The position numbers were made by a program, and so were the translations under genes. Shown piece by piece: positions 12,105 through 59,955 of a stretch of 64,000 nucleotides of DNA; positions within the stretch are counted from its first letter, which is position 1; every line of letters starts with the position of its first letter. This DNA is from Ylistrum balloti. Taxonomy: Eukaryota. The stretch is from positions 1,860,001 through 1,924,000 of the forward strand of contig NW_026781978.1 in NCBI RefSeq assembly GCF_031769215.1. Direction: 5' to 3'. The notes beneath the pieces are model-generated. The model had not been told where the DNA came from, did no database searches, and saw only the letters and a list, made by a program, of their open reading frames with translations.

Positions 12105-15100
12105 TTATTAACCATCTGTCGGCGATATGAACTATATGTTGACATGTTGAATAAATTCTTTCAATCGATAGTGACACCCGAAAGCAATTGTGTCAATAGG
12201 ATACTTGTACGTAGTGAAAATAGCAACATGGAAAGTAGATAATAACACTATTATATTATTTATGGGTGATTTCATGTTACATGTTTGTCACTTCCTCATT
12301 TCCAGAAAAATGAACCGACTTTTATCGATATGTTTATGATCGGTAAAATGCATACAGAGAGTTCTTGAACAATGCACCTTTAAGTTATCGCAAATTGAAC
12401 AAGAAGTCACAATATTTATACCAGAATCACAATTTAAGGACATATATAAGGTACATATGTATATGCAAAGTTGAAGCAACTAAATAAAGAAAGTATCTAT
12501 CAGCACTACACATAATGGTTGAAGATTCTAAGGTATTATATTGTTTGTGCCAATGGACAAGATAACCTATCCCGGTTGCTCTCGATGACAAGCGATGGTT
12601 CTCTGTATGTTGTTCAGTGAGACAACTACCAAATAGCAATTACAAGGATAGACCGCCTCAATTATGGCTTTGGCTGTTTACGGAGAATGAGGTAAAAACC
12701 AAGCAAAAAAGCGATTGCATTTGCATCATATTTACTTGAAAAGAAACTTAAATGTACAATTGTAGTTCACCTTCACACTTTAATGTTTTCATCTAGATGC
12801 ATTAGAATGAAATGAACAGCTGGTTAATATAGTCAGATACGTTGATGGCGATCTTCTGAAATATGTATTTACATACGAGTTGTTAGCTGAACGAGTACCA
12901 TGATACAAATCTAGGCTCTGAAAGCTAGAAGAATATTGGCCGTGTGATAATTATCAATATCACTAATAAAATGAATCATCTAGTGTTTGGTCGTGTCATA
13001 GATAATCCATGGCTTAAAAATCACTAAACACTAAAGTGGTAGTTACTTATTGTTCGCGTATAAGATGAGCTGCGAGGAACGTCAACACTTATTTCAAAGA
13101 AAATCACCATCCAATTAAAGAGATAACCTCTTCAAGAAAACCTTGTGGTATCCTTCTCGTGCATGTTTGCAAAGATCTCCTTGTAAATCTTTCTTTTTGT
13201 TTTCAAAGACTTCTATGTGAATCTTTCTTTTCTTCATATTTCGATCCAAAAATTTCATATCATAATCAGAATTTGATAACATGTCAGTATTTTCTGATTG
13301 TTTTCAATACAATCGTTTTTTTTATGAATTGAAATTAATATATGTCAATGAAATGTTTTGTGTTATTTGCCCCAGTAGTTCTACTTGCTGCCCTTACACA
13401 CACCTAGGATGATTTCGTAATATTCCTGTTATTATGACGCTGTTTTGTGTTTTGTAGTATTTTCCTTGATTCACAGACATGGAAATATCGGTGAGGCATT
13501 GATAATAGTATGTTGGCAATCGATGGTATCGATAGTCATTGGCCGTTTCTTAATGCAGTGTTAAGGAGTTTCCGGAAGTTAATTCAACATATTGTACACA
13601 TCATCATTGATGAACAAACAATCATTGCTACTCCAGCGATTTCATAGGAATTAATTACACGTAATTGGACAAAAGAGTTCTTTTAAGGTCTCTTAGAGAC
13701 CACAACGTATCTAGCGAACACGTATTCTACATGACATAATTAAACATTAAGAACTAGTGAGCGTTAAGTGGAATGGATTCTAAGTGTGTAGCAATTAACT
13801 TCATCAATTTGAAATGAAGTTGTAATGTTATTAAGTCCATGACAATTGACAACGGTTGTGAATCGGGTAAATGAAGAAGATTCATGAAAAGCGCAAACGG
13901 GGAAAATAATATAAAGATTCCATTTGCCAAGAAGTGCATATCAAGCGGTGAAAGGTCTTACCCCGTAAACCATATTTATATTGATGCAGACAACGTATTT
14001 TTTTTCGTATGAAGGTATTGGATATTGTAAAGCACATTTATTGAAGAGATCGATATATCTCGGTATTATTTGAAAACGGTGTTTCGGAGTGTCAAATCCA
14101 AATGACCACGTCATTGTATCTATGCAGAACGTAAGATTTAAAAGTTTCGGTGAAAAGTATCTCCAGCTGATAGATTAAAAAGGAGTATGAACAAGAACAT
14201 TATTGGGAAACCCATGATCTTCTTAATGAATGTTATATCTCCTTGTTCGATATGACTTTGGTTATGTTCAATGTTCGTGGCATGCCTTGAGATTTCATTG
14301 ACGTGAAGCTCGTTGTCATTCGAGAACTTACTGATGTCGTCTGGAAGGCAAAGTCTTCCTATCTTTACCCCTTTTTAAGGGCTTCCTGGTAATTTTTTCT
14401 TTCTTAAAGCGTTGGCCTCTTTGTATCAATTTTGAGTTTGAACTACAATTTTGTTAAGATGTTGGTATTTACTTGATAATTATCAAACAGAATATCATGC
14501 ATCTTTTATCTCCAGTAAAAGGTAATAAGCTGTCTCTAAAGATATCAAACAACCAAATGTTTGTCTCAGGTCGAAAACTATTGTCAAAGTCTGGTATTTC
14601 AAGCTGCAGAACGAGTTTTCTGTTGTATATAACATAATAATTTAGGATATTATGCAAGATCGTTCTTGTATCTTATCTTCAAGCTGAATTGCTAAAACAA
14701 GTTTCAATAAAAAATTCGATTATAAAATTCGTTACGGACAATAAAAAATCTAGACTGAACTAAAAAAAAAGAATGTTAATATGATATTGTATAAAACCAA
14801 TCTAAACCAATCCTGACCCCAGTTTCATGGATCTTCATTAAATTCAGGAATTGTCCTTACTTTGAAATAACCCCGAGGTTATTGCAAAAGGTAAGGAAAT
14901 TCCTTTCAATTCAAGTTTTTCCCCTTATTTTTGGTAATGATTTTCTATGGTAGTTAGTTATCCGTTAAACAAGGGCCATGACCGGTCATTGCGTTAATTA
15001 GTTGTTTAATGACTCTATCCCTAAGTTATCATTACTATCCGGTTCAATGATTTCTTTTCGTATTACAATACACGTAGTTAGATATGAGAAGTGTTAGTAA

Positions 15101-20659: not shown

Positions 20660-21066
20660 TTAAAACAAAAGCCATCCAGAAAATGTAGAGAGGTCTCCAC
20701 CCAAAATGCCGGAAGAATGCTGTGCACCTGTTCGTACCCAGACAGTTTCCCCAGGAAGCGCTGACGTCACAACTACATTGGATGCGGACGAGAACTCAGA
20801 GTGACTTCCAGAATCCGACAACGCCATACCATACAGATTACCATTAACAGTTAACTCTGTGTGTACACTAGTGTTGTTGAAGCTGACCGTTGTCCAGAAG
20901 AAAACATACGTGCCTGGTGTAGGAATTGTAAAGATCCCGGTAAAATAATTGTAGCCATTTCCGATGTTGGTTCGGACATGATCGAATTTGATCGTTTGGT
21001 GGTTTCCAATGTTTTCTATGTTGGACTTCAGTTGTACGTAGAATGCTACTTGTGCTGCTTGTATCC
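20660..21066 (-). CDS. C1q domain-containing protein, last coding exon (globular C1q domain)
   Basis: Acceptor ttattacAG|GG (phase 1). VAFYVQL...IKFDHVRTNIGNGYNYFTGIFTIPTPGTYVF...VWVR...FSGWLLF* contains the canonical gC1q motifs. Confidence 0.95.
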
Positions 21067-21691
21067 CTGTAATAAGTAGATGACAGCTCATTCAAGAAGC
21101 AATGTCTCAAAGAGTATACAGTGTTACCGTTTAATAGATGATATTTTAAGTTTGACTTTATTTTCAAGGCGTGAGATTCAGATCCAATGTGTGATGCATG
21201 ATCTTTCGCGGAAGTTATTTGTTCATTTACTTCGTGCACAAGTGAGAATAACATTATTGATGTTTAATGATAATGTGCATTACAAATCTTATAGAGTCAA
21301 TAACAAAAGTAACATTAGATATATTATATGTATACTGAAGTCCTTACGAGAAGAGTTTTTTTTTGTAAAATTGTTTGCCTGGTGTGGACTATGCCTGCAA
21401 TATATATATAAAAAAAATCCGACATATTAAGCAATTCCTGAAGTTTGGGGCGATGCAAAAAATAGTCGGTTTACCATTAATAACTTTTGTGGTTGATTAG
21501 GGTCAAACTGAACTTTTCGATAGAATATATGAAAAACGCAATTCGATTTCTTTAAATGTACTGTGTCGGCTGGTAACGGCTGTTTTTTTTTCAATTTACC
21601 TTTTCCCCAAATAGGAAATCGTTTTCTCGGTAAGGATAAAGCCAAAATAAAAATAGACGACTAATGGGGTTGAATCGCTCATTTGTTTTGC

Positions 21692-22022: not shown

Positions 22023-22523
22023 TGACCCATATCAGCCGACATACTTAACACCTACAAAACGAATCAATTTTAGTGTATATATGACATATGTATCCACATA
22101 TCTGCGGTAGAATCCACCATGAATTTTGCCTTTACTCTGCTTTTATTCAGCAGAAAATCGTTGAGGTATTAACGGGCTGATACGCCAGTTATCAGGGAAT
22201 GTGACCCCGTGGAGTGCACGAGTCCGTGCGAACGCATGCAGGTTTCGGTATATCATAAGGCTGCATTTAGAAATAGCCTTGTCATAAGTGGATATCGACT
22301 TATTTTAAAAACCAAAATTACCTGTTCATAACCAGCATGCTACATGTCTTATACTGCAAAAGCTTTATGTTTGCTAAAATATTGAATCGGAAACATTTTC
22401 ATGGAAATTACGAGAAGAATTATAGTGTACCCTCAAAACTTATGAACAATGGAACGTCTCAAAAATAGCCTTTATAGTACTTACTGTAAATATAGATTTA
22501 TATAGTGTGCTGTCAAAACGTAC

Positions 22524-22950
22524 GTGTGCTTGACCTGGAGAAAACAGGTAAGTCTTGTCCCTGATCCAAATATTCTTTTCGCTGAAATATATCGATATCA
22601 GAAATACCAATATTCATTTTCATCCTGTCAATCTCTTTACTTTGTCTGTCGATAGTATTTCGTAGTCGTGCCATCTCAATTTCACAGGATCTGGCGATGT
22701 TTTGGTATTCGTTAAGTTGTTCCATGGCCTCTGAAAATCGAGAGTTTGTTTGCTCTTGGGTCATCATAAACTCCTGTACTTTCATCGCCGACAGCTCATG
22801 CATCGAGCTTTTTGTCGTGGTCGTCAAGTTTACAGCATCATCATTCGTGTTTACAGATTCATCTATACACCACGCAAAACAAACACAAGAAAAAACTACA
22901 TGAAGTGCTAGAAAATTCGACAGTCGATTATAATACAGGAACATTTTCAT
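22524..22950 (-). CDS. C1q domain-containing protein, first coding exon (signal peptide plus coiled coil)
   Basis: Hydrophobic N-terminus (FLALHVVFSCVCFAWC) and a heptad-like segment (MEQLNEYQNIARSCEIEMARLRNTIDRQSKEIDRMK). Donor C|GTACGT is phase 1 and matches the gC1q exon, giving about 277 aa. Confidence 0.85.
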
Positions 22951-27498: not shown

Positions 27499-29988
27499 AC
27501 AAGAGATCCCAGAGGGATCTTGGCGCCCACCATTTGAGGATCTGTTTTCAGTTCTTGAAGATTTGCTTATTTTTTTTTGTTTGTTACAGGTGTTGTAAAT
27601 GTTCATGAACTGGTCTTCATTGAATGTACTCAATGATGGCACAAGATATTTTTATTAAGCACCTATTAGCAAATATCATTTGAAAAAGATCCCAAAGTAT
27701 TATTAGATAGCAGTCAGTTACAGGTGGATAATGGACAATATGCTTGTGCTGTATTACTGTCAACATCCAAGATGGCTGCCTGTGGGCCACCTTGATTTCA
27801 AATCAGTCCAAAAAAGGTACAATGCACAACTAAGGAACAAGGGAAACCAATATCTATGAAATATCAAAAGGATCCATCCAGTACTTCCTCAGATATAGCA
27901 GTAACAAGATTTTACTCTCAAAATCCAAGATGGCTGCCTGTCAGCCATCTTGATTTCGGATCAGTCCAAAAAGGTATAATGCACAACTTGGAACCAAAGG
28001 GAACCTGCATATGAAATTTGAGAAAGATCCATCCAGTACTTTCCAAGAAATAGCAGTAACAAACTTTTACTTCCAAAATCCAAGATGGCTGTCTGTCGGC
28101 CATCTTGAATTCGAATCAGTCCAAAAAAGGTACAATGCACAACTAGGGACCAAGGGGAAACTGTACATGAAATTTGAGAAAGATCCATCCAGTACTTTCC
28201 AAGAAATAGCAGTAACAAACTTTTACTTCGAAAATCCAAGATGGCTGTCTGTCGGCCATCTTGAATTCGAATCAGTCCAAAAAAGGTACAATGCACAACT
28301 AGGGACCAAGGGGAAACTGCATACGGAATTTGAGAAAGATCCATCCAGTACTTTCCAAGAAATGTAACAAACTTTTACATCCAAAATCCAAGATGAAATT
28401 TCAGTTCAAAAAAGGTTCAATGCACAACTAGGGACCAAAGGGAAACTGCATATGAAATTTGAGAAAGATCCATCCGGTACTTTCTCAGAAATAGCGGTAA
28501 CAAACTTTTACATCCAAAATCCAAGATGGCTGTCTGTCAGCCATCTTGAATTCGAATCAGTCCAAGAAAGGTACAATGCACAACTAGGGACCAAGGGGAA
28601 ACTGCATATGGAATTTGAGAAAGATCCATCCAGTACTTTCCAAGAAATAGCGGTAACAAACTTTTACATCCAAAATCCAAGATGGCTGTCTGTCGGCCAT
28701 CTTGAATTTGAATCAGTCCAAAAAAGGTACAATGCACAACTAGGGACCAAAGGGAAACTGCATATGAAATTTATTAACAAACTTTTTAAGACAAAAAGGT
28801 ATAATGCACAACTTGGAAAAAGGGTGCATATGAAATTTGAGAAAGATCCATCCAGTACTTTCCAAGAAATAGCTGTAACAAACTTTTACATCCAAAATCC
28901 AAGATGGCTGTCTGTCGGCCAGAAATAGCAGTCCAAAAAAGGTACAATGCACAACTAGGGACCAAACTCAGAAATAGCGGTAACAAAATCCAAAATCCAA
29001 GATGGCTGCCTGTCAGCCATCTTGATTTTCAGTCCAAAAAGGTATAATGCACAACTTGGAACCATGCATATGAAATTTGAGAAAGATCCATCCAGTACTT
29101 TCCAAGAAATAGCAGTAACAAACTTTTACTTCCAAAATCCAAGATGGCTGTCTGTCGGCCATCTTGAATTCGAATCAGTCCAAAAAAGGTACAATGCACA
29201 ACTAGGGACCAAGGGGAAACTGTATATGAAATTTGAGAAAGATCCATCCAGTACTTGTCAAGAAATAGCGGTAACAAACTTTTACTTCCAAAATCCAAGA
29301 TGGCTGTCTGTCGGCCATCTTGAATTCGAATCAGTCCAAAAAAGGTACAATGCACGACTAGGGACCAAGGGGAAACAGGATATTAAATTTAAGACAGGTC
29401 CATCCAGTACTTTCCAAGAAATAGCAGTAACAAACTTTTACATCCAAAATCCAAGATGGCTGTCTGTCAGCCATCTTGAATTCGAATCAGTCCAAAAAAG
29501 GTACAATGCACAACTAGGGACCAAAGGGAAACTGCATATGAAATTTGAGAAAGATCCATCCGGTACTTTCTCAGAAATAGCGGTAACAAACTTTTACATC
29601 CAAAATCCAAGATGGCTGTCTGTCGGCCATCTTGAATTTGAATCAGTCCATAAAAGGTACAATGCACAACTAGGGACCAAGGGGAACCTGCATATGAAAT
29701 TTGAGAAAGATCCATCCAGTACTTTCCAATAAATAGCGGTAACAAACTTTTACTTCCAAAATCCAAGATGGCCACCTGTCGGCCATCTTGAATTCGAATC
29801 AGTGCAAAAAAGGTACAATGCACAACTAGGGACCAAGGGGAACCTGCATATGAAATTTGAGAAAGATCCATCCGGTACTTTTCCAGAAATAGCGGTAACA
29901 AGAATTGTTTACGGACTGACGGACGACGGACCACGGACGGCAAGACGATTTGAATACCCCACCATCTGATGATGGTGGGCTAAAAAAA
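27499..29988 (-). mobile_element. Non-autonomous Helentron (HINE/DINE-1-like) with an internal 156-bp tandem array
   Basis: Right end: hairpin CCCACCATC-TGAT-GATGGTGGG (29958-29979), A-tract and a GACG-type microsatellite (29911-29940). Left end: subterminal inverted repeat GCCCACCAT (27525-27533) and stem-loop AGATCCC-AGA-GGGATCT (27504-27520). 156-bp period (28011, 28167). Confidence 0.85.
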
Positions 29989-32669: not shown

Positions 32670-32890
32670 CTGAAATATATCAATGCACCTTGCCATGATT
32701 GAGAGGCTATTTCTTTTAATGTTGAAAATCAAAAGTTGTCTCCATCATTTATGTATTGGGGAAAGCTATGCATCTCAAAATGTGGGGGAGGAGAGATAAT
32801 TCTAAAATCTAGGTAAATATTCTGATGTGTTTTAAATAAATATGTGATGTTTTTATTGTATATAGTCATTTGATTGTTTTAGTCACTTAC

Positions 32891-33094
32891 TTTGTTCATA
32901 TGTGATGCCAAACCATTATGTAAGATAGAATGGAAGTTTTCCAGTCGACTGCCATGGTAAGCAAACATTGTTTTTCTCTGTCGACGATTTTCCTCAAATT
33001 TGGCTTCATCAGCTTCACTAGGTATAACTTCAAACACAAAATCAGGGTCGGTGGTTTGCACAGTGTCTCCTGTCTGCTTCTTTATCTCTTCAAA
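32891..33094 (-). CDS. PARP16: PARP16 exon 3 (catalytic His)
   Basis: aacAG|TTT to AAA|GTAAGT; contains AYHGSRLENFHSILHNGL. Confidence 0.97.
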
Positions 33095-33668
33095 CTGTTT
33101 GAGATTATAGATAGTTTTAAGTCTTAATAATACATTTCGCAAAATCCTTAATATATTGTAGATGCTATGATATGTACAAATAATTACACCTGTTACAATT
33201 TCGTCAAATCTTTCCTTGGTTTCAGTAAGAATATGAACTTCTTCCAAAAAATCTGCAAGATCTTATCTAAATTTTCGAGAAACTAATTGGGTACCTGTAG
33301 TCTTAACAAGTACTCAAAAGAGTACATTGTTTGTGCAGTTCCAATAAAAATTCATTATCTTATACTGGAAACAAGTATTGGCAATGTACCTTATTTCCTC
33401 TAATATCAAACCATTGGAATAAAATGACACATTATATCATAAATTCTCTGACAAAAGGGGTAAGGTTATTATAGGACAAAAAAAGAATCAATGACAGATA
33501 AATATGTTATACATAATGTGTTAGATTATTGCCTATATTTTTTATTATTATTTATATGACTACCCATGTACAGTGCTATGTTATGTACAGAATTACATAT
33601 ATTTGATATAGATATGAATTATTATAGTGATTTGACAAAATCATCAATATTCCCTAAATTACCAATAC

Positions 33669-35650: not shown

Positions 35651-37981
35651 ACCACAGACCTGCTGGTACAATGTTACTGACGGACTCGGATACCACAGAC
35701 CTGCTGTTACAATGATACTGACGGACTCGGGATACCACAGACGTGTTGGTACAATGTTACTGACGACTCGGATACCACAGACCTGCTGGTACAATGATAT
35801 TGACGGACTCGGGATACCACAGACGTGTTGGTACAATGTTACTGACGGACTCGGATACCCCAGACCTGCTGGTACAATGTTACTGACGACTCGGATACCA
35901 CAGACCTGCTGGTACAATGATATTGATGGACTCGGATACCCCAGACCTGCCGGTACAATGTTACTGACGGACTCTGATACCACAGACCTGCTGGTACAAT
36001 GATATTGATGGACTCAGATACCCCAGACCTGCCGGTACAATGATATTGATGGACTCGGATACCACAGACCTGCCGGTACAATGATATTGACGGACTCGGG
36101 ATACCACAGACGTGTTGGTACAATGTTACTGACGGACTCGGATACCCCAAACCTGCCGGTACAATGTTACTGACGGACTCGGATACCCCAGACCTGCTGG
36201 TACAATGTTACTGACGACTCGGATACCACAGACCTGCTGGTACAATGATATTGATGGACTCGGATACCCCAGACCTGCCGGTACAATGTTACTGACGGAC
36301 TCTGATACCACAGACCTGCTGGTACAATGATATTGATGGACTCAGATACCCCAGACCTGCCGGTACAATGATATTGATGGACTCGGATACCACAGACCTG
36401 CTGGTACAATGTTACTGACGACTCGGATACCACAGACCTGCCGGTACAATGTTTCTGACGGACTCGGATACCACAGACCTGCTGGTACAATGATACTGAC
36501 GGACTCGGATACCACAGACCTGCTGGTACAATGTTACTGACGGACTCGGATACCACAGACCTGCTGGTACAATGATATTGATGGACTCGGAAACCCCAGA
36601 CCGGCCGTTACAATGTTACTGACGGACTCGGATACCCCAGACCTGCTGGTACAATGTTACTGGCGGACTCTGATACCACAGACCTGCTGGTACAATGATA
36701 TTGATGGACTCGGATACCACAGACCTGTAATTACAATGTTACTGACGACTCGGATACCACAGACCTGCTGGTACAATGATATTGATGGACTCGGATACCC
36801 CAGACCTGCTGGTACAATGTTACTGACGACTCGGATACCACAGACCTGCTGTTACAATGTTACTGATGGACTTGGGATACCACAGACCTGCTGGTACAAT
36901 GTTACTGACGACTCGGATACCACAGACCTGCTGTTACAATGTTACTGATGGACTCGGGATACCACAGACCTGCTGGTACAATGTTACTTACTACTCGGAT
37001 ACCACAGACCTGCTGTTACAATGTTACTGACGGACTCGGGATACCACAGACGTGTTGGTACAATGTTACTGAAGACTCGGATACCACAGACCTGCTGGTA
37101 CAATGTTACTGACGGACTCGGGATACCACAGACGTGTTGGTACAATGTTACTGAAGACTCGGATACCACAGACCTGCTGGTACAATGATATTGATGGACT
37201 CGGATACCCCAGACTTGATGGTACAATGTTACTGACGACTCGGATACCACAGACCTGCTGTTACAATGTTACTGACGGACTCGGGATACCACAGTCGTGT
37301 TGATACAATGTTACTGACGACTCGGATACCACAGACCTGCTGGTGCAATGATACTGATGGACTCGGATACCCCAGACCTGCTGGTACAATGTTACTGACG
37401 GACTCGGGATACCACAGACCTGCTGGTTCAATGTTACTGACGTCTCGGATACCACAGACCTGCTGGTACAATGTTACTGACGTCTCGGATACCACAGACC
37501 TGCTGGTACAATGTTACTGACGACTCGGATACCACAGACCTGCTGGTAAAATGTTACTGACGACTCGGATACCACAGATCTGCTGGTACAATGTTACTGA
37601 TGGAATCGGATACCACAGACCTGCTGGTACAATGATATTGATGGACTCGGGATACCACAGACCTGCCGGTACAATGTTACTGACGGACTCGGATACCCCA
37701 GACCTGCTGGTACAATGATATTGATGGACTCGGGATACCACAGACCTGCTGGTACAATGTTACTGACGACTCGGATACCACAGACCTGCCGGTACAATGT
37801 TACTGATGGACTCGGGATACCACAGACCTGCTGGTACAATGTTACTGATGGACTCGGGATACCACAGACCTGCTGGTGCAATGATACTGATGGACTAGGA
37901 TACCCCAGACCTGCCGGTACAATGTTACTGACAGACTCGGATACCACAGACCTGCTGGTACAATGTTACTGACGGACTCGG
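35651..37981. repeat. 40-42-bp minisatellite array, about 57 copies, in AK6 intron 1
   Basis: Unit GGATACCACAGACCTGCTGGTACAATGTTACTGACGGACTC with 1-bp length variants; source of all ORFs at 35567-38193. Confidence 0.97.
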
Positions 37982-43519: not shown

Positions 43520-44302
43520 CATATATATTCCTTAAAAAGATACAGTCAATAAGACGTACACAGTAGTGTCATGATACAGGATCATTATATGTATACAGGT
43601 GTTGGAAAATATTCATCAATTACTTATGTTAAGTATTCATTCATTTTTTATGGTTTTCATGTTTATCATTTGCATTTAGTATGTAATAATATGATATATG
43701 ATAATAATTGCATCTTGAATGGCATACTGGTAAAGTTATTTTATCAGGATAGAATCTATCAACTCAACTTAAATCTGAAATAGAACTTGATTGAAAATAT
43801 AGCCAATGTATGATTTTATATTATGGACACTAGGATACATTTTCTGTTTTTTTTACGAAAATTATTAATTTGTATGGTTTATATTTCTTAAATTATACAA
43901 GGATAGAATTACTTAAATAGTATCAGAGTTTTACACAGTGGGAGACTTGTCCCCTGTATTGTAAGCACCTGATAACCGCTGACTACTAAAATAGCAATTT
44001 ATCAAAGACTCTCATTTCTAAAGTTGGGATTTGATAACTTCTACATTTGTATGTCCATCTTCTCTCCGCTAATTGAAATATTTGATGAATTAAAATGAAT
44101 ACCTCTTTTTTCAAGTTCATGATAAGATAAAATCAAAATGGGATGAATTGTTATTTTTTTCAAGTAAGAATGGCCGCAATATCATCACCAATACTTGTAA
44201 CAGTCTGGTTAACATCAAAATGGAATACAAATACATTTATGTACAAAATGTATATTTGAAGGATGGAGCATCAACGCCAGGAAATCCGTCAATTTAGATT
44301 TT

Positions 44303-44351
44303 ATTGGTTGACATGTTTCAGTTGGCTAGGCCAACCGTCTTCAGAACAAAT
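44303..44351 (-). ncRNA. Minimal type I hammerhead ribozyme motif (Penelope pLTR/retrozyme type)
   Basis: Minus strand: ATTTGTT CTGAAGA C GGTTGGC-CTA-GCCAACT GAA ACATGT C^AACCAAT. Core CUGANGA and GAAA, 7-bp stem II, palindromic stem III, GUC cleavage triplet, stem I with 6 of 7 pairs. Confidence 0.75.
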
Positions 44352-47172
44352 CTACATCGAAAATTGGAAAGCTTAAGTGTAAATTACGGTTCATGAAGTT
44401 GATTGTTCTTATCACATAATATACAATTGTAAAGAGTTACCCGCTAAAGTAAGATCAAAAAGTTACAAGAATTAAAAGTTGTTGAAAGTATATTCTAAAG
44501 AATTAAACTCACATTGGGTTTGTTATCTTTACATAGTCAAAGATGCCATATATACTATACACAGATATAGTTCTGTCTCTCAGATAATAGGGTAGTATGA
44601 ATTAAGAACAGTCTTATATCAAATTATACTTCCATTCTCCCTGTCATTGCTCAAGCAGTTTCTTTTGTTCAAAACTTGACATTTTACAATTGTGTAAACC
44701 ATGTCAGAAGTCACCACTAAAACCAAGTTAAAATAATTTAGCCTGTTCCCAACTTAATTTGTGTACAACTTCTTTCCAGGAGTGGAGTGAGAGGAGTAAT
44801 GTAATTTTGTGCGATACTGTAAAATTGTGGGGGAATTTATTTTCCCTGATTTTGTTGGTACTTTTGAATTCATATGTCCATTAACTGTTGAAATAGTATA
44901 AGTAGATTTAGTTAGCCATATACATATATATCTCCATGAAATAATTTTTTTGGAAAATACACAAATATACCTTTTTACAATACTATGATGTTTGTGTCTA
45001 TTTCATGATTCTAACTAATTTAATAAAAGCATAGAAAAATTCTGTCCTGATCAAAAACTGTTATTTTACAGCTACTCTTTTCACAACAGATTTTTGCTTG
45101 AAGATTTTTTGTGTGACAGCATTGCAGCTTTATTTGTTAAAAACCGTAATTAATATGGATTACTTCCCTTTGTTTTGATTTTAGGTGTTGCATGTGAACT
45201 TCACTTTGATATTGGCAAGCTTTTATGTATGAACCCCTTTGTTTTAACATAAAATAAATTGTTGCGATATCTGCATTTTATTTTGAATGACACTGCAACT
45301 GACTGCAGATAAAAAAGACTTTGTATCACATGCATCATAAATATATATGTATTTGAAATAGATCTTCCAATTCATATTTGTGTTATGATCATGGATGTTT
45401 AGGATACATGTATTTCAAGTAGAATTAATCAATCGGTTTGGAAATATTTTCCTAGTCCCTTTATACTGAATAATACATTAGTACAACTTCTAACCAAGTC
45501 AGAAGGTACTGTCTTCTGCTTCAATGATTACAGTCAATATTCAAGTAGTTTTGTGATGATCTGTTTTATCATTAACGGGAGATCTTGGCTATTCATGTTT
45601 TATTTACATTGGTACAGATTGTGTTAAAACATTTGATTAAAATCACAATGTTGTGAAATTGTAACAGGGTATGGATAGTTGAATTACATGATCACTATTC
45701 AGAGTTTCGATGAAACCTTGTGTTGATAACTTAGAGAATATATGCTTAACTTCTTAGTGTTAAGTTATAAGTATAATGTATAATACAAATCAGGAACATT
45801 TCCATTTTTGTCTTGTTCTTTTATCAATTTATCATGCAAAAAGCTGTTATATTCTAGTATTCTAGCTGCAAGTTCTTATATATACAAAATTACATTCTGT
45901 GTTTCTGAGATTGATGTAGAACTTTCACAAAACTAAAGGACTAAGTTGATTGGGGTATATGTATAAAATTAAGTTAAGCAAATTGTAAGGGAACAAGGGA
46001 TGTGCAATACCAGTGTTCTATAAATACTTGCATGGGAATATTGAGTGCTGAAGTGCTAATTGAAAGCAGATGTCCCATTTTATTTCTTTCTTCTCTAAAA
46101 CACTAATAAGGTACCAAACTAAGTGAGATATCTTATGTTAATTAGATTGGACAAACTCTGAAGTCGGTGTTTTGAGAGAAAATTCTAGTGGAGGTCAGTT
46201 CATCCTGGAAATGAAAATGTCCAATGTAATATTTTATGTCTAATCAGTCCAACCGTTGTTAACCGAACCAGCTGGGACAAGTCACTAGCAAGCTGTATAC
46301 AATATTGTTCTATATTCTTGGCCGACATAAGCGAATATCAGACAGTGCCGGTGGATGTTAGATTGCCAAGAAAAGATTGTTGGTTGTTGAGATCTTTGAG
46401 GTCGCCTTTCAGAAATCTTTATCCTGCTTTTCTGTTCAAATCTTGAGTACCGTCAAATTATTATACAACTTATCTAATTCTGATACAAGTTTTTGTGTAT
46501 ATAACGGGCTTCAGCGTCACGTGTGAAAGACCGGCAACGATAATCTAATCTATGTGATGATCTTTTGAAGTATAATCATGTTGCATATTTATTTATCGAG
46601 GATAAGAAACCTTGACACGGTTATTTTTCATACGGTTTTCAGGACGCTGACAGCGTCGTCCGATATTTTGCAAATGACCACACACAAATGCATCTTAAGA
46701 ACGATGGCGCCACTGGTCTTGGAATTTCGTCGCGATATCAAATATCGGTTACTTTGACATTTATCACTAATCTGGTACGACTCCTTTCACAAATATAGCT
46801 TTAAATCAATACACTGCGATCCCGTTCTGGAACTCGGGAGTTTGAAAAAAACGCTCCCTCATTGCTTCCAGACTCTGCATCTTCTATCATCGTGTTGCAG
46901 ACAAGGTAGGAACTCATTTGAAAATAGAAACTTGATCCATTTTCGGAAGGCCAAACGACAGTCAATCCGATACGCCGTTTTAGGGATCGGTTGTTTCAGG
47001 AGATACCAGATGTTAACCCAGTTTGATTTGAACTACTTTAATCAATGATACAAGTCAGTAGAAGAAGACCTCACGGAGTTCATCGATTCAGTTAACAATC
47101 ACAGGGGATTGGCACGATATGTATATATTATAATGACAAGTGTTTCCGTGAGGGGAAATCTGAACACACACG

Positions 47173-54271: not shown

Positions 54272-55908
54272 TCACCGTCGGTGTACCATTAACTTATCAT
54301 ATCTTCCATGAAAATTAATCCTGACTGTGCCATTCCATCGAAATATCAGGTTTATTTGACTTCCTTAATCAAAGCATGTGCGTGTTCAATTTTCATACTT
54401 AGACATCGTGATTACAATGCATATTATAGACTGCCAGATTTTGTTCAAGATCAGACGTCAACGTTTTATGTATATAGTGCATATTAACTGACTGTATGAA
54501 TGATTGCAACGACTGCCAAAAGGAACTGCATCTTTGCCTTGGTAATGAGTTGCTGCCAAAAATGTCCGAATCAGCATTCATTTCGGTATGTTTGTTTGTA
54601 TCAAATTCCTGATTTTCTCCGATGGTTCAAATCTTGTTGGGCTGACCAAAGGTCTAAGTAAATATTATTTCCAAGATAAATTTTCTCAAAAATAAATCTT
54701 TTGAAGTATTTTGCCTCAGATCACATTTCACTGCTTCAGACAAAATAGTTGTCATGAGGAAACTAGACACTAGAAACCAAAGCTTTACATGAACAAAAGT
54801 ACTACAACTAGATTTGCCTGGATTTTGGATCTTAATAAAAGCGTGTACTGATTTCTTTCAACATGACAGTTGTGTGAAACAAAAGGTCTTTGATACATGT
54901 ACTTGTGCATACTATTTCGTGTGTTATAAATATATATATATTAATATGATAGCTGAATTACAATGCTGAATATGAACAGATATGATGGACATACAGATAA
55001 AATACAATGAAATATTTGATACCTTCGTATCTCTAATGAGGAATTATACATTTAGATATAATGAAAAGTAACTAGTTGTTAATTGAAAAATAGTTTGCCA
55101 AATATTTTGTCGTAATGGAAATTTCATATTATCATGCCTTGGCAAAATTGAATAACTGTACATGTAATTATGTACTTCTAGATATCTCGTTTAGCTCATG
55201 TAAAATATAACCTTTGCATAATTGAATATATTGTTATATATAAAACACATTTATTGCAAATTTTGTGGTTATGCGATATTTTATGTTCGGGTATGAAATG
55301 AAATTTTGATGAATATACCATATTCGTCAATAAATTGTGCGCAAACAATTAGCAAATTACATTCTTGAAATAAAAAATTAAACATTATTGATTATTACAA
55401 ACCATATTTTAATCAATGTAAAAACAATGAATAGCATAATACGGGACACACATAAGTCTTGTTTGAATTTTTAGAATAAAAAAATGTTATAAATTATCAT
55501 TTTGACCAAAAAAATATTCACCAACAGTTGTAATCTATGGAAACGTCTGAGCAAATTAGGCCAAACTTACGACAAGAAAATTAGAAAATTGTATATTTAT
55601 AGAAAAAAACTAAATTGTGGATAATATTTTGGTATTGCCTTATACGGAACTAAAAAAACGTGGAAACAAATGCAAGTGAGAACTAGAGTGAACCAGACAT
55701 TTTTATATATCCTTGCATACATTCATCACTAGACTTTATGAGGAAAAAAGGTAATAGAAAAAACTACTATATATACTGCATATGTATGTTCAATCAAGCA
55801 CAAGGTATCCTACGACGTATTACCCTCGATAACAACACAAACAACTGGTTTCTTCTGGATATGTGATATCAACGCTTACTTGATCCTGTTCGAAAGACAT
55901 AGCGACAT

Positions 55909-56080
55909 TTACACGATCCATGCTCCCTTGGAACACTGACAGAAGCGAGATATCCGCAAGGGTAGAAAGCGGACGGCTGGAAGAGAGCCATTCTTTGGAC
56001 GTTCACCGTCTTCCACCATGATTGGCGTGAAGAACGAATTCTCTTCGCCACAGATTATTACAGGCCCGCAGTTGCTGCAT
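55909..56080 (-). CDS. Spaetzle/neurotrophin-like cystine-knot protein, exon 3 (stop)
   Basis: tttttgacAG|A phase 2; CSNCGPVIICGEENSFFTPIMVEDGERPKNGSLPAVRFLPLRISRFCQCSKGAWIV*, with a terminal CxC. The ORF track shows the wrong frame here. Confidence 0.82.
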
Positions 56081-57546
56081 CTGTCAAAAAGCGTGATAAT
56101 AAAGATAATTCATGCATACACTACTAGCTCCATAAAAAACATGGAAAGATGTTTTGGAAAGAATATTTCATACATATTAGTTGGTCACAAAACATATCTA
56201 TCCCAAAAGCATTTCAATGGTTTATCTGTTTTAAGGATTTCTTAGAATGGCGTTGTTTAGACTTGCATACAAATATCAAAATAGGAGTTTTACAAATATA
56301 TTAACCAAACTCCTACACTAACAGTACTTGATACATGAAATCATTTTGTCCTTTGCCAGTTCACATCAAACGTTTTTATTTCCGACATAATCGACCGAAT
56401 TATCCATTGCCCACTATTTATAGCATTTACAAAATTTACAGTCAAGATCAGTTATATAGTTTGATATACTTGCCCTTATGCCTTTATGCAAAAACAAGTC
56501 TTCCTAAAAAAATTAATGGTTCGACATTGTAGTGAAAATCTAGAGATATTACAAAATTTGTAATTATTTATTTATTTTTGGACCTAGAAAAAGACACAGG
56601 GTTTTATCAGTTTTTTGCCTTACCTAAAGTTTTTTTGGAAGTACTTGGGAGCTTTCATTTGATTCTATAAGATTACCATTTTAGATTTCTAACTGGAGAA
56701 AAATGGCATATAAATTGTACACTTGTATGACGGTTAGCTTTGATTGAACGCCATTATAAATCACATATTTGATCTATAGAATCAACCGGACTGCCATTAA
56801 AATGTTTCAAATGTCGTGCATTGGTATAGTATACCAAATGGAGATAATACTTATTGCACTGTCAATGCAGAGACAATAGTTGGAGTGATGGACACGATTT
56901 AAGTTAACTTGAAATATTCCTCTTTACATGTAAGTTATACCTGTTTTATAATTGTGATTTTGGTGTTTTGCATTGGTTATTTCATAATATATAGGAATCA
57001 GTGAAATCGAACCATTTGTCGGTATCATTTACCCACTGAAATTATAGGTTTTATATGTGGCAATTATGAAATTGGCGATTGATTCCATCCTACGTTACAA
57101 TAGTGACATTATAATAGTCATGCTTGGTTGTCATTCATGGTGCCTAACTACACACCCTTTCTTGTAAATCAATATGATGGCAATGTGCAAAATGAAAAAA
57201 AGAAAAGTTTGCCCGAAAACATTATTTGCAGCAACAAAAATGATTCTTTATGTATATATTTTAGGTTTGGAAGTGTTTGCGACGTGCAGTATACAGTTTC
57301 GATTTTATGAAGATTCGACCGCAAGTAGAAAATTGATATCAAATCAATTCCAAAGCAATATGTTAGACTGTCATGTGATTACATATTTTATTATTTACAT
57401 TTGTAAATGTACTTATAAGCTGATATAAAGTTTTGTGAAAGTAAATGTGAGTAAATTAAATAGTGGTGAATTTTTTTTATAAGCAGAAAAAAGAAACACT
57501 TGTTTTAGAAGCATTTTTGCAAGTAAAACGTTGATTAACCACTTAC

Positions 57547-57651
57547 GAACAGACGCCCTGGAAGATGATCTGGTAATTGTTCCTTGTCTGCACCACGTTG
57601 TAAACTGTGTTGTTGTAATCCACCTTCCACACGCGGTCTGCTACCCATTGT
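57547..57651 (-). CDS. Spaetzle/neurotrophin-like cystine-knot protein, exon 2
   Basis: ttttcatAG|A to TC|GTAAGT, phase 2/2; QWVADRVWKVDYNNTVYNVVQTRNNYQIIFQGVC. Not in the ORF track. Confidence 0.82.
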
Positions 57652-58177
57652 CTATGAAAAAGATAAAGAGAAGAAATTATGATGATGGTCTCATCGAGAA
57701 TGAAACTTGATATGTTTGATACTCATTGATGTACCTGGTGGTCCTGTTGTTGTTTACCTTATTCTCATTTGGGACCATGATACTACTTACATAAACTTCC
57801 ATTGTCCAATATTTGTATTGTGGGTGTCGATAAAGCAGAAGACGCTTACTCTTCCAAACCACGTGGCCTTATTCTCCTTGTCTTTATATATTATTTTCTT
57901 GTATTCTATTTGTCCCTGTCATTGAATTGGTGTTTGAATTATGATTCCGTGAACATGTCGGTGTTATCTTTTCCATCTTCCCAAACTAACTAACCATTAA
58001 AATGAAAAGCAATATCAGGGATGACCAAACATCGAAATTATTTAGTTATTATTAAGTTTTCATCTAGTGACAAATGATACTGCATTATACTGGTATGTGA
58101 CACTGCACGGCGTTATCAAGCACTTTTAAGCACCCTGTCCACAGCTATTTTGTTAACAAAAACTATCATGTACTCAC

Positions 58178-58482
58178 GTTTGACAACAGGAAGGACATGT
58201 TCGCCTTTTCGATCGTTCTGGACATTCTTGTTCTGCTTTCTCCTTCCTGTTCCTGGAAGGTTTCTCCTGTCTGTTTCCGGGATTGAAACGAAAGGTACGA
58301 TCCTTGTCTTTAATTGTTGCCAGCATGAGGGAGCCCATGTCCTCTTTTAACCCCTTTATGTCATCTTTAGATAAGAAAAGTCCCTGATATCCCGTCAGAT
58401 CATACTTATCACCACTGTAATGACCATGGTCTCCTGGGAATACGGCAAAGTAGACGGCAAGGACAAAGAATATTGTATACAT
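58178..58482 (-). CDS. Spaetzle/neurotrophin-like cystine-knot protein, first coding exon (signal peptide, prodomain, RSKR site)
   Basis: MYTIFFVLAVYFAVFPG signal peptide; charged prodomain; RSKRR-TCPSCCQ; donor AC|GTGAGT. Three exons give 193 aa. Confidence 0.82.
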
Positions 58483-59166
58483 AACGGCTTTCTTAATGAA
58501 ATCTGTTGTCTATAGAAGCAAAAATATCTTTTTCTACAAGTTTGTTCTTTTTTTCATTTACGAAGTAAACAGCAGTGTGCCGTCTTAAGAAACGAATTGC
58601 ATATGCCTGTTATGAAAACAAAGTACTAGTTTTATACCCGTCAAGATTAAAACAGGGGTTTTGTCAATCAAGATTTCAGTTCTGCATTTGCTAGAGTTCA
58701 AGTGAGGATTACATCCATCGTGTTAATATGTGTTTAACTCAAGGGCCATCCTCATGCTGTTATAGCAGAATCGATTTCTTAATCTTCTGCCGATGTTGAC
58801 AAGTGAGGAAGACTTGAGCGACACCGTGTGGGAATCCTTTTCTGACGAAATAATCCACTTTACGATTGTGATCTCCTTTGTCAAAAATATCTCAATATAT
58901 TGAACCAATACTAGCCAGACAAAGACTATTCAAGCAGGGAAACTAAGGATGTCATTATTTGGATCCTCTGAGACCTCAATTCGTCTTATTTTGATCGATT
59001 TAGTACTAAATAAACAGAAAGAACATATAAAACTAAGTAAACCCCATGACCCCACCTCTCACTGTTCATTTAATAATTTATATTATATTATATTATATCA
59101 TATCATATTATAATATATTATATTATATAAGGTATGAGACAAGACTTGACGATTGTGAAAACTGAG

Positions 59167-59955
59167 AGGAGTTTTAGGTACTGATAGCCTACAATACAGG
59201 AGTCTTAGGTACTGATAGCCTACAATAGAGGTGTTTTAGGTACTGATAACCTACAATACAGGAGTCTTAGGTACTGATAAACTACAATACAGGAGTCTTA
59301 GGTACCGATAACCCAAAATACAGGAGTCTTAGGTACTGATAACCCACAATACAGGAGTCTTAGGTACCGATAACCTACAATACAGGCGTTTTAGGTCCTG
59401 ATAACCTACAATACAGTAGTTTTAGGTACTGATAACTTACAATACAGTAGTCTTAGGTACTGATAACCTACAATACAGGAGTCTTAGGTACCGATAACCT
59501 ACAATACAGGGGTTTTAAGTACTGATAACCTACAATACAGGAGTCTTAGGTACTGATAACCTACAATACAGTAGTTTTAAGTACTGATAACCTACAATAC
59601 AGGAGTTTTAAGTACTGATAACCTACAATACAGTAGTCTTAGGTACTGATAACCTACAATACAGGAGTCTTAGGTACTGATAACCTACAATACAGGAGTT
59701 TTAAGTACTGATAACCTACAATACAGGAGTCTTAGGTACTGATAACCTACAATACAGGAGTTTTAAGTACTGATAACCTACAATACAGGAGTCTTAGGTA
59801 CTGATAACCTACAATACAGGAGTTTTAAGTACTGATAACCTACAATACAGGAGTCTTAGGTACTGATAACCTACAATACAGGAGTCTTAGGTACTGATAA
59901 CCTACAATGCAGGAGTTTTAAGTACTGATAACCTACAGTACAGGGGTTTTAGGTA
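59167..59955. repeat. 31-bp minisatellite array, about 25 copies
   Basis: Unit TTAGGTACTGATAACCTACAATACAGGAGTC; period 31 (59641, 59672). Confidence 0.97.

What the first reader, a model, noticed from the sequence alone, without database searches (positions are those of the whole stretch)
55909..58482. Hidden secreted cystine-knot cytokine precursor (Spaetzle/neurotrophin-like) with a furin site
Seen: three exons, two of them missed by the ORF track, join in frame through phase-2 introns into a 193-aa protein. It has a signal peptide, a charged prodomain, RSKR (58204-58215) and a mature domain of about 100 aa with 9 Cys (CxxCC ... CxCxxC ... C ... CxC). Established: Spaetzle and neurotrophins are pro-proteins whose C-terminal cystine knot ends in CxC; neurotrophins are cut by furin-type convertases, insect Spaetzle by clip serine proteases. 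Inference: this is a divergent ligand of that superfamily, activated by furin rather than a protease cascade, and the odd Cys count suggests a disulfide-linked dimer. The CxCxxC spacing and the very short second loop look atypical, so it may be a lineage-specific subfamily.
Basis: partly seen in the sequence, partly recalled or inferred. Interest (0 to 1): 0.75.

Follow-up and report, generated by a model that had tools for sequence, protein, structure and literature searches.

The report
Scallop neurotrophin-like cystine-knot pro-protein gene
This is a real three-exon scallop gene for a secreted pro-protein whose furin-released tail is predicted to fold like nerve growth factor; it belongs to a small, unnamed family seen only in scallops and mussels, and its receptor and role are unknown.

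Summary
On the minus strand, exons 58482-58178, 57651-57547 and 56080-55909 join through two GT..AG phase-2 introns into 193 aa. This equals the RefSeq model 'uncharacterized protein LOC132544480' of the scallop Ylistrum balloti, so the gene is annotated but uncharacterised.

Four scallop orthologues keep the length, RSKR and every Cys. Pecten maximus has the same introns. DNA conservation is confined to the exons and the 5' flank, and dN/dS is 0.04-0.07.

A profile search of 1.84 billion representatives found only seven proteins at E <= 0.001. Those with a named source are from scallops or mussels. One paralogue has a spliced transcript contig with the same two junctions.

No Pfam family (Spaetzle, NGF, IL-17 included) and no PDB sequence matches. 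The AlphaFold model of the mature domain (pLDDT 77) has only cystine-knot growth factors as neighbours:
- neurotrophins first (Z 6.5-7.5 over 82-91 of 100 residues)
- DAN proteins, coagulogen and PTTH next (about 6)
- IL-17 at 5.5
- Spaetzle at 2.8-3.6

Best reading: a new bivalve family of neurotrophin-like ligands cut by a proprotein convertase. The dimer argument from an odd Cys count is weak, because a tenth conserved Cys (C87) lies in the prodomain and complete paralogues mostly have eight. No RNA evidence exists for this gene itself.

The parts
58178..58482 (-). Exon 1 (305 nt). Holds the start codon (58480-58482), the signal peptide (about residues 1-17), the prodomain, RSKR and the first three Cys of the mature domain (CxxCC). 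It ends in phase 2 before GTGAGT.
   Evidence: Identical to residues 1-101 of P0001. Same boundary in Pecten maximus and in the Logan genomic contig L004.
58432..58482 (-). Probable signal peptide (residues 1 to about 17, MYTIFFVLAVYFAVFPG). The cleavage point is not predicted by a dedicated tool.
   Evidence: Hydropathy windows score 2.2-2.8 over residues 1-15 and then fall below 0. The hydrophobic N-terminus is conserved in the orthologues.
58216..58431 (-). Prodomain (about residues 18-89). Residues 20-69 are conserved (GHYSGDKYDL..GLF.SKDEIKGLKEDMGS.MLATIKDKDR.FRF.PG). Residues 70-86 form a variable basic/acidic linker. C87 is invariant (58222-58224).
   Evidence: Alignment A1. dN/dS is 0.04 for residues 20-93. 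In the full-length model, residues 55-66 form a beta strand with pLDDT about 79, while 1-49 and 68-95 have pLDDT below 50.
58204..58215 (-). RSKR (residues 90-93), a proprotein-convertase (furin-type) R-X-K-R site followed by R94.
   Evidence: Invariant in four scallop orthologues. Paralogues carry RVKR, RRKR or RHKR at the same place. It lies in a segment with pLDDT below 50.
57652..58177 (-). Intron 1 (526 nt, GT..AG, phase 2). It contains a very high-copy repeat at about 57770-57960.
   Evidence: Not alignable to the Pecten locus. Depth rises to about 11,000 against 7-11 beside it in a DNA run.
57547..57651 (-). Exon 2 (105 nt). Encodes the first beta hairpin of the mature domain up to knot Cys C136 (QWVADRVWKVDYNNTVYNVVQTRNNYQIIFQGVC).
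   Evidence: The exon is 105 nt in Pecten maximus and maps at 105-106 nt (overlapping block ends) in the Argopecten paralogue transcript.
56081..57546 (-). Intron 2 (1466 nt, GT..AG, phase 2).
   Evidence: Not alignable to the Pecten locus.
55909..56080 (-). Exon 3 (172 nt including the TAA stop at 55909-55911). Encodes CSNC, C147, the second long hairpin and the terminal CQC.
   Evidence: Same acceptor position in Pecten maximus.
58483..58735 (-). Conserved non-coding 5' flank (5' UTR and promoter region), with a TATA-like hexamer at 58636. A second conserved block lies at 58862-59006.
   Evidence: blastn against the Pecten maximus locus gives 73% identity running from the exon to 58735, and 70% over 59006-58862. 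TATA-like site.

Best explanation
The locus is a genuine three-exon protein-coding gene of the scallop Ylistrum balloti (RefSeq LOC132544480).

Proposed mechanism:
1. The 193-aa product enters the secretory pathway through an N-terminal signal peptide.
2. It is made as a pro-protein. A conserved prodomain is joined by a flexible charged linker to a C-terminal domain of about 100 aa.
3. A furin/PC-type convertase cuts at the invariant RSKR site in that linker.
4. The released domain has the cystine-knot growth-factor fold. The proposed knot pairs are C99 or C100 with C147, C136 with C184, and C141 with C186. It is built of two long beta hairpins and is closest in shape to vertebrate neurotrophins.
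5. It most likely acts as a dimeric extracellular signalling ligand for a receptor that is still unknown.

The gene belongs to a small family with the same prodomain motif, basic site, CC doublet and exon structure. That family was detected only in pteriomorph bivalves (scallops and mussels) and is too diverged for any curated family model to recognise.

Shown here: the gene structure, purifying selection, the family and its distribution, and the predicted fold class. Inferred: secretion, convertase cleavage, disulfide connectivity, dimerisation and signalling function.
For: Gene model: the exon peptides equal P0001. Introns and phases are identical in Pecten maximus. DNA conservation is confined to the exons and the 5' flank. 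dN/dS is 0.04 for the prodomain and 0.05 for the mature domain, with dS above 1.

Family: there are four scallop orthologues of 193-196 aa. A profile search of 1.84 billion representatives gave only 7 hits at E <= 0.001. Those with a named source are scallop or mussel proteins, and two more members came from the word search. C99, C100, C136, C147, C184 and C186 are invariant, with a seventh Cys shifted by one position. A basic site (RSKR, RVKR, RRKR or RHKR) sits directly before the Cys-rich domain in most members. A paralogue transcript contig splices at the same two positions onto the Argopecten genome.

Fold: the AlphaFold model of residues 94-193 has pLDDT 77.4 and is all-beta with long hairpins. 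In an unbiased comparison with 48,161 PDB chains, ranks 1-38 are all cystine-knot growth factors, led by NGF at Z 7.3. On re-ranking, the top 25 entries are all neurotrophins, with Z 6.5-7.5 over 82-91 aligned residues. The independent full-length model gives the same neighbours.

Processing: the linker 68-95 that holds RSKR has pLDDT below 50. Two N-glycosylation sequons (NNT, NGS) are kept as sequons in all four orthologues.
Against: There is no RNA evidence for this gene or its direct orthologues. The only public run that holds the locus is DNA, and no transcript contig carries P0001-P0004.

No sequence-level link to any known cystine-knot family was found, whether by Pfam hmmscan at E <= 10 or by a PDB profile search at E <= 10.

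Foldseek E-values are weak (0.04 or worse) and all Z-scores are below 8. Neurotrophins lead DAN proteins, coagulogen and PTTH by about one Z unit only.

The alignment behind the model is shallow (11 sequences). Model coordinates could not be inspected, so the knotted disulfide connectivity is assumed rather than seen. Function and receptor are entirely inferred.
Confidence: 0.7

Rival explanations
1. It is a true Spaetzle-family Toll ligand, a divergent orthologue of arthropod Spz that activates a scallop Toll receptor in immunity or development.
For: It has the same overall architecture: signal peptide, prodomain, then a C-terminal cystine knot ending in CxC. One paralogue (P0010, Mizuhopecten) is named 'Spaetzle domain-containing protein' by UniProt. 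Bivalves have many Toll receptors (background knowledge; PMC3788107 was listed but not read).
Against: Pfam Spaetzle does not match any family member even at E <= 10, so the UniProt name could not be reproduced. Spaetzle chains are among the weakest cystine-knot matches of the model (3e07 Z 3.6 at rmsd 8.6; 7b1c Z 2.8). The activation site is a furin-type R-X-K-R rather than a clip-protease site.
Confidence: 0.1
2. It is a Trunk/PTTH-type ligand that signals through a Torso-like receptor tyrosine kinase. Oyster 'Cragi-PTTH3/4' precursors have the same layout.
For: The PTTH structure 5aoq matches at Z 5.9-6.1 with the highest sequence identity of the non-neurotrophin hits (20%). According to PMC8398477, PTTH/Trunk precursors comprise a signal peptide, an N-terminal domain, a proteolytic site and a C-terminal Cys-rich peptide, and homologues exist in oyster and Yesso scallop. 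Trunk is widespread in lophotrochozoans (PMC6660194; PMC11087794).
Against: Neurotrophins align over more residues and with higher Z (82-91 aa, Z 6.5-7.5, against 73-77 aa, Z about 6). The scallop protein cited as PTTH in PMC8398477 (XP_021368706.1) is not one of the family members found here. No sequence comparison with Trunk/PTTH could be run, because no tool supplied those sequences.
Confidence: 0.13
3. It is a divergent invertebrate IL-17-type cytokine of the three-disulfide 'T1A' kind, part of the known IL-17 expansion in marine molluscs.
For: IL-17A, IL-17F and IL-25 match the model at Z 5.2-5.7. Invertebrate IL-17s keep all three knot disulfides and are expanded in molluscs (PMC11087794).
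Against: Pfam IL17 gives no hit. Identity in the structural alignments is only about 10%, against 15-20% for neurotrophins. IL-17 ranks below neurotrophins, DAN proteins, coagulogen and PTTH.
Confidence: 0.04
4. It has the cystine-knot fold but is not a receptor ligand. It could be a clottable or structural protein like horseshoe-crab coagulogen, an extracellular antagonist like the DAN or noggin proteins, or a defence peptide.
For: Coagulogen (Z 6.1, rmsd 2.9-3.0 over 86 residues; Foldseek TM 0.69) and DAN-family antagonists (Z 6.3-6.4) are within about one Z unit of the neurotrophins. The fold alone does not show function.
Against: A prodomain as constrained as the mature domain, together with a conserved convertase site, is typical of growth-factor and hormone precursors. 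Pfam DAN, Coagulin and Noggin models do not match. It is a single-copy, slowly evolving gene, unlike typical bivalve effector families.
Confidence: 0.12
5. It is not a functional gene, but a chance ORF combination or a pseudogene.
For: No RNA-seq evidence was obtainable for this locus.
Against: The reading frame is intact in five scallop genomes or contigs with identical intron positions. dN/dS is 0.07 at dS above 1, and conservation is restricted to the exons.
Confidence: 0.01

Closest known systems
Vertebrate neurotrophins (NGF, BDNF, NT-3, NT-4; Pfam NGF PF00243)
   Same: Both have a signal peptide, a prodomain, an R-X-K/R-R convertase site and a cystine-knot domain of about 100-120 aa. Neurotrophins are the best structural matches (Z 6.5-7.5, with 82-91 of 100 residues aligned across the whole NGF core). 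From memory only, the N-terminal stretch C..WV.D[KR]....D......V.V resembles the NGF and BDNF strand after the first knot Cys, and human proNGF is cut at RSKR.
   Different: There is no detectable sequence homology. This protein has a CC doublet at knot Cys 1 and much shorter C2-C3-C4 spacing (4-5 residues each). The hairpin between C4 and C5 is longer. It also has extra Cys at C96, C138 and prodomain C87. No Trk or p75 link was tested.
Arthropod Spaetzle (Pfam PF16077) and Drosophila neurotrophins
   Same: Both are pro-proteins activated by cleavage just before a C-terminal cystine knot that ends in CxC. One paralogue carries this name in UniProt.
   Different: The Pfam model does not match. 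The structural match is weak (Z 2.8-3.6). The site here is furin-type rather than a clip-protease site. The Spz-type CCxC with an intermolecular Cys before C5 is absent.
Trunk / PTTH (Torso ligands), including the oyster Cragi-PTTH precursors
   Same: The precursor layout is the same (PMC8398477). The cystine knot has short inter-Cys loops. The PTTH structure matches at Z 5.9-6.1 with 20% identity.
   Different: The match is lower and shorter than to neurotrophins. The published scallop PTTH homologue has a different accession.
Horseshoe-crab coagulogen (C-terminal NGF-like half)
   Same: It gives the best rmsd-to-length ratio of all hits (86 residues at 2.9-3.0 A, Z 6.1; Foldseek TM 0.69). 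It is also activated by proteolysis.
   Different: Coagulogen is a 175-aa clotting protein with a different N-terminal half. There is no sequence match, and nothing suggests clotting here.
IL-17 family (Pfam PF06083)
   Same: It has a cystine-knot-type fold, is secreted and is expanded in molluscs. It matches at Z 5.2-5.7.
   Different: There is no Pfam match and only about 10% identity. It ranks below the other cystine-knot classes.

Membership tests
Cystine-knot growth-factor superfamily | Six framework Cys arranged C1 ... C2-x(n)-C3-x(n)-C4 ... C5-x-C6, conserved among relatives | tested here: met
   C99/C100, C136, C141 (shifted by one position in paralogues), C147, C184 and C186 are conserved across 11 family members.
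Cystine-knot growth-factor superfamily | All-beta fold of two long hairpins whose nearest structural neighbours are cystine-knot growth factors | tested here: met
   The model has pLDDT 77.4. Ranks 1-38 of 48,161 PDB chains are all cystine-knot proteins. Two independent models gave the same picture. All Z-scores are below 8, so the support rests on the uniformity of the list rather than on any single score.
Cystine-knot growth-factor superfamily | Knotted connectivity, with the C1-C4 disulfide threading the ring closed by C2-C5 and C3-C6 | not testable with these tools
   Model coordinates are not exposed. The connectivity is inferred from where the Cys lie relative to the predicted strands.
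Neurotrophin (NGF) family, Pfam PF00243 | Significant match to the family profile or to neurotrophin sequences | tested here: not met
   hmmscan at E <= 10 gave no hit for the exons, the full proteins or the mature domains. A profile of A3 against PDB sequences at E <= 10 gave no hit.
Neurotrophin (NGF) family, Pfam PF00243 | Neurotrophin-type three-dimensional core | tested here: inconclusive
   The top 25 entries are neurotrophins (Z 6.5-7.5, 82-91 aa), but the next classes follow within about one Z unit.
Neurotrophin (NGF) family, Pfam PF00243 | Furin-type cleavage site between the prodomain and the mature domain | tested here: met
   RSKR at residues 90-93 is invariant in the orthologues. 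Paralogues carry RVKR or RRKR. Actual cleavage was not tested.
Neurotrophin (NGF) family, Pfam PF00243 | Non-covalent parallel homodimer that binds Trk and p75 receptors | not testable with these tools
   No multimer prediction or binding assay is available.
Spaetzle, Pfam PF16077 | Significant match to the Spaetzle profile | tested here: not met
   No hit at E <= 10 for any member, including P0010, which UniProt names 'Spaetzle domain-containing'.
Spaetzle, Pfam PF16077 | Structural similarity to the Spaetzle C106 cystine knot | tested here: inconclusive
   3e07 scores Z 3.6 (rmsd 8.6) and 7b1c scores Z 2.8, the lowest of the cystine-knot hits. Spz crystal structures have disordered loops, so a weak score does not exclude kinship.
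Trunk / PTTH | Sequence homology to Trunk or PTTH | not tested
Only the structural match to 5aoq is available (Z 5.9-6.1).
IL-17, Pfam PF06083 | Significant match to the IL17 profile | tested here: not met
   No hit at E <= 10. The structural Z is 5.2-5.7 with about 10% identity.
Proprotein-convertase (furin/PC) substrates | A conserved R-X-[KR]-R motif in an exposed segment of a secretory protein | tested here: met
   The motif is conserved. It lies in a linker with pLDDT below 50. The N-terminus is hydrophobic. Cleavage itself cannot be tested here.

The most novel reading that the evidence does not exclude
The family would be a previously unrecognised, bivalve-restricted branch of the neurotrophin / Spaetzle / Trunk group of cystine-knot ligands, with its own activation logic. 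In the scallop orthogroup, the invariant prodomain Cys (C87, three residues upstream of R90, the first residue of RSKR) would pair with the orthogroup-specific extra Cys of the mature domain (C138). After convertase cleavage the equally conserved prodomain would then stay covalently tethered, giving a two-chain ligand or a latent complex. That differs from the non-covalent pro/mature association of Spaetzle and proNGF.
Probability: 0.15. Interest if true: 0.65.

Novelty: new variant of a known kind. Interest (0 to 1): 0.42.

Why it matters
Cystine-knot ligands such as neurotrophins, Spaetzle, Trunk/PTTH and IL-17 drive neural, developmental and immune signalling. How these branches relate outside vertebrates and insects is debated (PMC11087794). 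A slowly evolving, neurotrophin-shaped pro-protein family that no curated model recognises, and that is limited to scallops and mussels, adds an orphan ligand to the bivalve signalling repertoire. It gives a concrete target for receptor de-orphaning against Trk, p75, Toll and Torso-like receptors. The family alignment could also seed a new family model, so that these genes stop being annotated as 'uncharacterized'. The finding is useful but not surprising, because lineage-specific cystine-knot families are common.

Tried and rejected
- RNA-seq junction test. The single public run that holds the locus consists of DNA contigs that run straight through both introns, so it says nothing about splicing.
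- Exon-by-exon Pfam scans and a PDB sequence search of exon 3 found nothing.
- The joined spliced model was never typed or submitted to any tool. After exon 1 found the identical database protein P0001, that stored protein was used for all later searches.
- The first word search used window:58177-58509:-. This is exon 1 plus 9 upstream in-frame codons and one intron codon, with no stop. It was chosen so that the tool's length window (up to 1.75 times the query) could include a 193-aa protein.
- Full-length and mature-domain Pfam scans of all family members gave only noise: Death, chi-conotoxin, ASTER, DUF7172 and Ams2, all well below their cut-offs.
- A profile of the mature-domain alignment against all PDB sequences found nothing at E <= 10.
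- Literature searches for the locus and accession identifiers found nothing. The scallop neuropeptide survey PMC5996578 does not mention PTTH or a neurotrophin.
- No paralogue lies in the window (tblastn).
- Profile-profile comparison with NGF, Spz, Trunk and IL-17 alignments was not done, because no tool supplied those sequences and typing them from memory is unreliable.
- Rejected readings: chance ORF or pseudogene, on the comparative data; strict Spaetzle, NGF or IL-17 membership, because the profile tests failed.
Full report
**1. What is in the sequence**

I read the minus strand of 55700-58700. It holds an ATG at 58482 followed by an open frame to 58178, which ends ...TGT CAA AC|GTGAGT. 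A second coding block begins after ...TTTTCATAG| at 57651 and ends ...TGT TC|GTAAGT at 57547. A third begins after ...TTTTTGACAG| at 56080 and runs to a TAA stop at 55911-55909.

The in-frame pieces translate to 101, 34 and 56 residues. The two split codons are ACA (Thr) and TCA (Ser). Both introns are GT..AG with pyrimidine tracts and both are phase 2. RSKR is residues 90-93, at 58204-58215. After it the protein has nine Cys in the pattern CxxCC ... CxCxxC ... C ... CxC.

**2. The spliced model is an annotated protein**

I searched exon 1 by reference instead. The reference was extended by nine in-frame upstream codons and one intron codon, so that the tool's length window could reach 193 aa.

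The search returned P0001, 'uncharacterized protein LOC132544480 [Ylistrum balloti]', 193 aa, 100% identical. The three exon peptides sit at residues 1-101, 103-136 and 138-193 of P0001, and the split codons give T102 and S137. The window is therefore scallop DNA, and the gene is 'hidden' only from the ORF track. All later searches used the stored protein P0001.

**3. Is it a real gene?**

- Orthologues of 193-196 aa exist in Pecten maximus, Mizuhopecten yessoensis and Argopecten irradians, at 75-82% identity.
- The Pecten maximus locus (L001) has the same three exons, the same 105-nt middle exon and the same phase-2 boundaries.
- A genomic Logan contig from a further species (L004) ends its exon 1 at the same ...GAA AC|GTAAGT.
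- Nucleotide similarity between the Ylistrum and Pecten loci is confined to the three exons, about 250 nt of 5' flank and one further upstream block. The introns do not align.
- A Nei-Gojobori calculation, done exon by exon, gives dN/dS of 0.04 for the prodomain, 0.05 for the mature domain and 0.07 overall, with dS above 1.

This is strong purifying selection on exactly the proposed frame.

Direct RNA evidence for this gene could not be obtained. The only public run that holds the locus is a DNA run whose contigs cross both introns. No transcript contig carries P0001-P0004.

**4. The family**

A HMMER profile of the four orthologues, searched against 1.84 billion representative proteins, gave only seven proteins at E <= 0.001. 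Those with a named source are from Pecten maximus, Argopecten irradians, Mizuhopecten yessoensis and Mytilus edulis. A profile word search added another Mizuhopecten protein and a Mytilus californianus protein.

All members share:
- a prodomain motif (K-Y-x-L/C-x-x-Y ... G/N-L/M-F-x-x-E/D-x-E-I);
- a basic site directly before the Cys-rich domain (RSKR, RVKR, RRKR or RHKR, weaker in two members);
- an invariant CC[QES]T;
- the segment V-x-Y ... Y-x-V-V/Y-Q/H ... Y/W-Q-x-x-F-x-G-x-C;
- two more Cys 4-6 residues apart;
- F-x-P ... C-x-C near the C-terminus.

A 1653-nt Logan contig (L003) encodes the Argopecten paralogue without interruption. It maps onto the Argopecten genome in three blocks, with junctions at the same two positions and phases, and the middle block maps at 105-106 nt because the block ends overlap. 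That is a spliced transcript of a family member. In Pecten maximus, one paralogue lies about 2.1 Mb from the orthologue on the same chromosome.

**5. Which known family?**

By sequence, none. Pfam hmmscan at E <= 10 finds no Spaetzle, NGF, IL17, PDGF, DAN, Noggin or Coagulin match for the exons, the full proteins or the mature domains of any member. Single-sequence and profile searches of all PDB sequences at E <= 10 are empty. UniProt calls paralogue P0010 a 'Spaetzle domain-containing protein'. I could not reproduce that.

By structure, the answer is clearer. AlphaFold2 on the mature-domain alignment (11 sequences) gives pLDDT 77.4 and an all-beta model with long hairpins at residues 8-28, 37-45, 52-68 and 79-95 of the mature domain. 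Every Foldseek hit in the top 50 is a cystine-knot growth factor, although the E-values are weak, at 0.04 or worse.

A Foldseek-independent comparison with 48,161 PDB representatives puts cystine-knot proteins at ranks 1-38:

| Structure | Z | Aligned residues |
|---|---|---|
| NGF | 7.3 | 86 |
| proNGF entry (3ij2) | 6.9 | 89 |
| Gremlin | 6.4 | 78 |
| SOST | 6.3 | 78 |
| Coagulogen | 6.1 | 86 |
| PTTH | 5.9 | 73 |
| IL-17A | 5.5 | 78 |
| Spaetzle (3e07 / 7b1c) | 3.6 / 2.8 | 79 / 70 |

Re-ranking Foldseek's hits puts neurotrophins in all of the top 25 entries, with Z 6.5-7.5, 82-91 of 100 residues aligned and the whole NGF core (residues 10-116) covered. A second model, made from the full-length alignment, gives the same neighbours.

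I conclude that the domain has the cystine-knot growth-factor fold with high probability, and that it is most like neurotrophins. The margin over DAN proteins, coagulogen and PTTH is only about one Z unit. The knotted disulfide connectivity could not be inspected.

**6. Anatomy and likely mechanism**

- Signal peptide: residues 1-15 are strongly hydrophobic and are followed by FPGD. This is a probable signal peptide (inference).
- Prodomain: residues 20-69 are as conserved as the mature domain. In the full-length model, residues 55-66 form a beta strand at pLDDT about 79, which suggests docking onto the knot domain.
- Linker: residues 68-95, which carry RSKR, are predicted disordered and hence accessible to a protease.
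- Glycosylation: two sequons (NNT, NGS) are kept as sequons in all orthologues.
- Proposed pathway: secretion, convertase cleavage at RSKR, then release or rearrangement of a ligand of about 100 aa.

The spacing between knot Cys 2, 3 and 4 is 4-5 residues each.

**7. The Cys count**

Two observations weaken this. First, an invariant tenth Cys (C87) lies in the prodomain, three residues upstream of R90, so the secreted precursor has an even number. Second, complete paralogues mostly have eight Cys in the mature domain: seven core positions plus one nearby N-terminal Cys.

C138 is specific to the scallop orthogroup and co-occurs there with C87. P0010 likewise has an odd number of Cys in both the pro and the mature parts. 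A disulfide between the prodomain and the mature domain is therefore possible, but it is untested. Dimerisation is expected for this fold, and whether it would be covalent is open.

**8. Comparison with the literature**

PMC11087794 places Trunk, Spaetzle, NGF, PDGF, TGF-beta and IL-17 in one cystine-knot superfamily, and notes IL-17 expansions in some molluscs. PMC8398477 describes oyster PTTH/Trunk-like precursors with the same layout of signal peptide, N-terminal peptide, basic site and Cys-rich peptide. It cites a Yesso-scallop homologue, XP_021368706.1, which is not one of the proteins found here. No paper in the library mentions the locus or accession identifiers of this family.

**9. 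Verdict**

This is a real, annotated but uncharacterised scallop gene for a convertase-processed, neurotrophin-shaped cystine-knot pro-protein. It belongs to a small family that was detected only in scallops and mussels and that no curated model covers.

It works like a neurotrophin, Spaetzle or Trunk-type pro-ligand. It is not demonstrably a member of any of those families. I rate it a new variant of a known kind, of moderate interest. The same scan noted two other 'Spaetzle-like' candidates on other pieces of this genome. I did not examine them.

Noticed in passing
window 57770-57960 (intron 1 of the gene): A very high-copy repeat. In the DNA run, contig depth jumps from 7-11 to about 11,000, with many contigs ending or branching there. 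One weaker copy (71% identity) lies at window 814-920. The Pecten and Argopecten loci fetched here have no copy.
   Followed up: partly
window 59167-59955: A tandem array of a 31-bp unit (25.5 copies, 91% matches) about 700 bp upstream of the gene's start codon. It lies just beyond the conserved upstream block at 58862-59006.
   Followed up: no
window 20660-21091 (-) and 22513-22950 (-): A C1q-domain ORF (Pfam C1q, E 1.7e-21). An upstream ORF with a hydrophobic N-terminus and a coiled-coil-like stretch probably belongs to the same bivalve C1q-domain gene.
   Followed up: partly
window 32879-33247 (-): An ORF that matches the first part of the PARP catalytic domain (Pfam PARP, E 1.4e-11). It is probably one exon of a PARP-family gene.
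   Followed up: no
window 1648-4554, 10489-12105, 27754-29901, 35651-37981: Large satellite-like tandem arrays with units of 34, 52, 156 and 41 bp. The 156-bp and 41-bp arrays produce long spurious ORFs on both strands.
   Followed up: no
window 44260-44400: Another first-stage note proposes a minimal hammerhead ribozyme here. An Rfam scan of the whole window at gathering thresholds found no family.
   Followed up: partly
L001 (Pecten maximus LR736846.1, 23.79-23.81 Mb) and L005 (same chromosome, 25.91 Mb): The orthologue and a paralogue of the family lie about 2.1 Mb apart on one Pecten maximus chromosome. The Mytilus edulis model P0008 (164 aa) lacks the RVKR/CxxCC segment that its M. californianus counterpart P0013 has, so it is probably a mis-predicted model.
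   Followed up: partly
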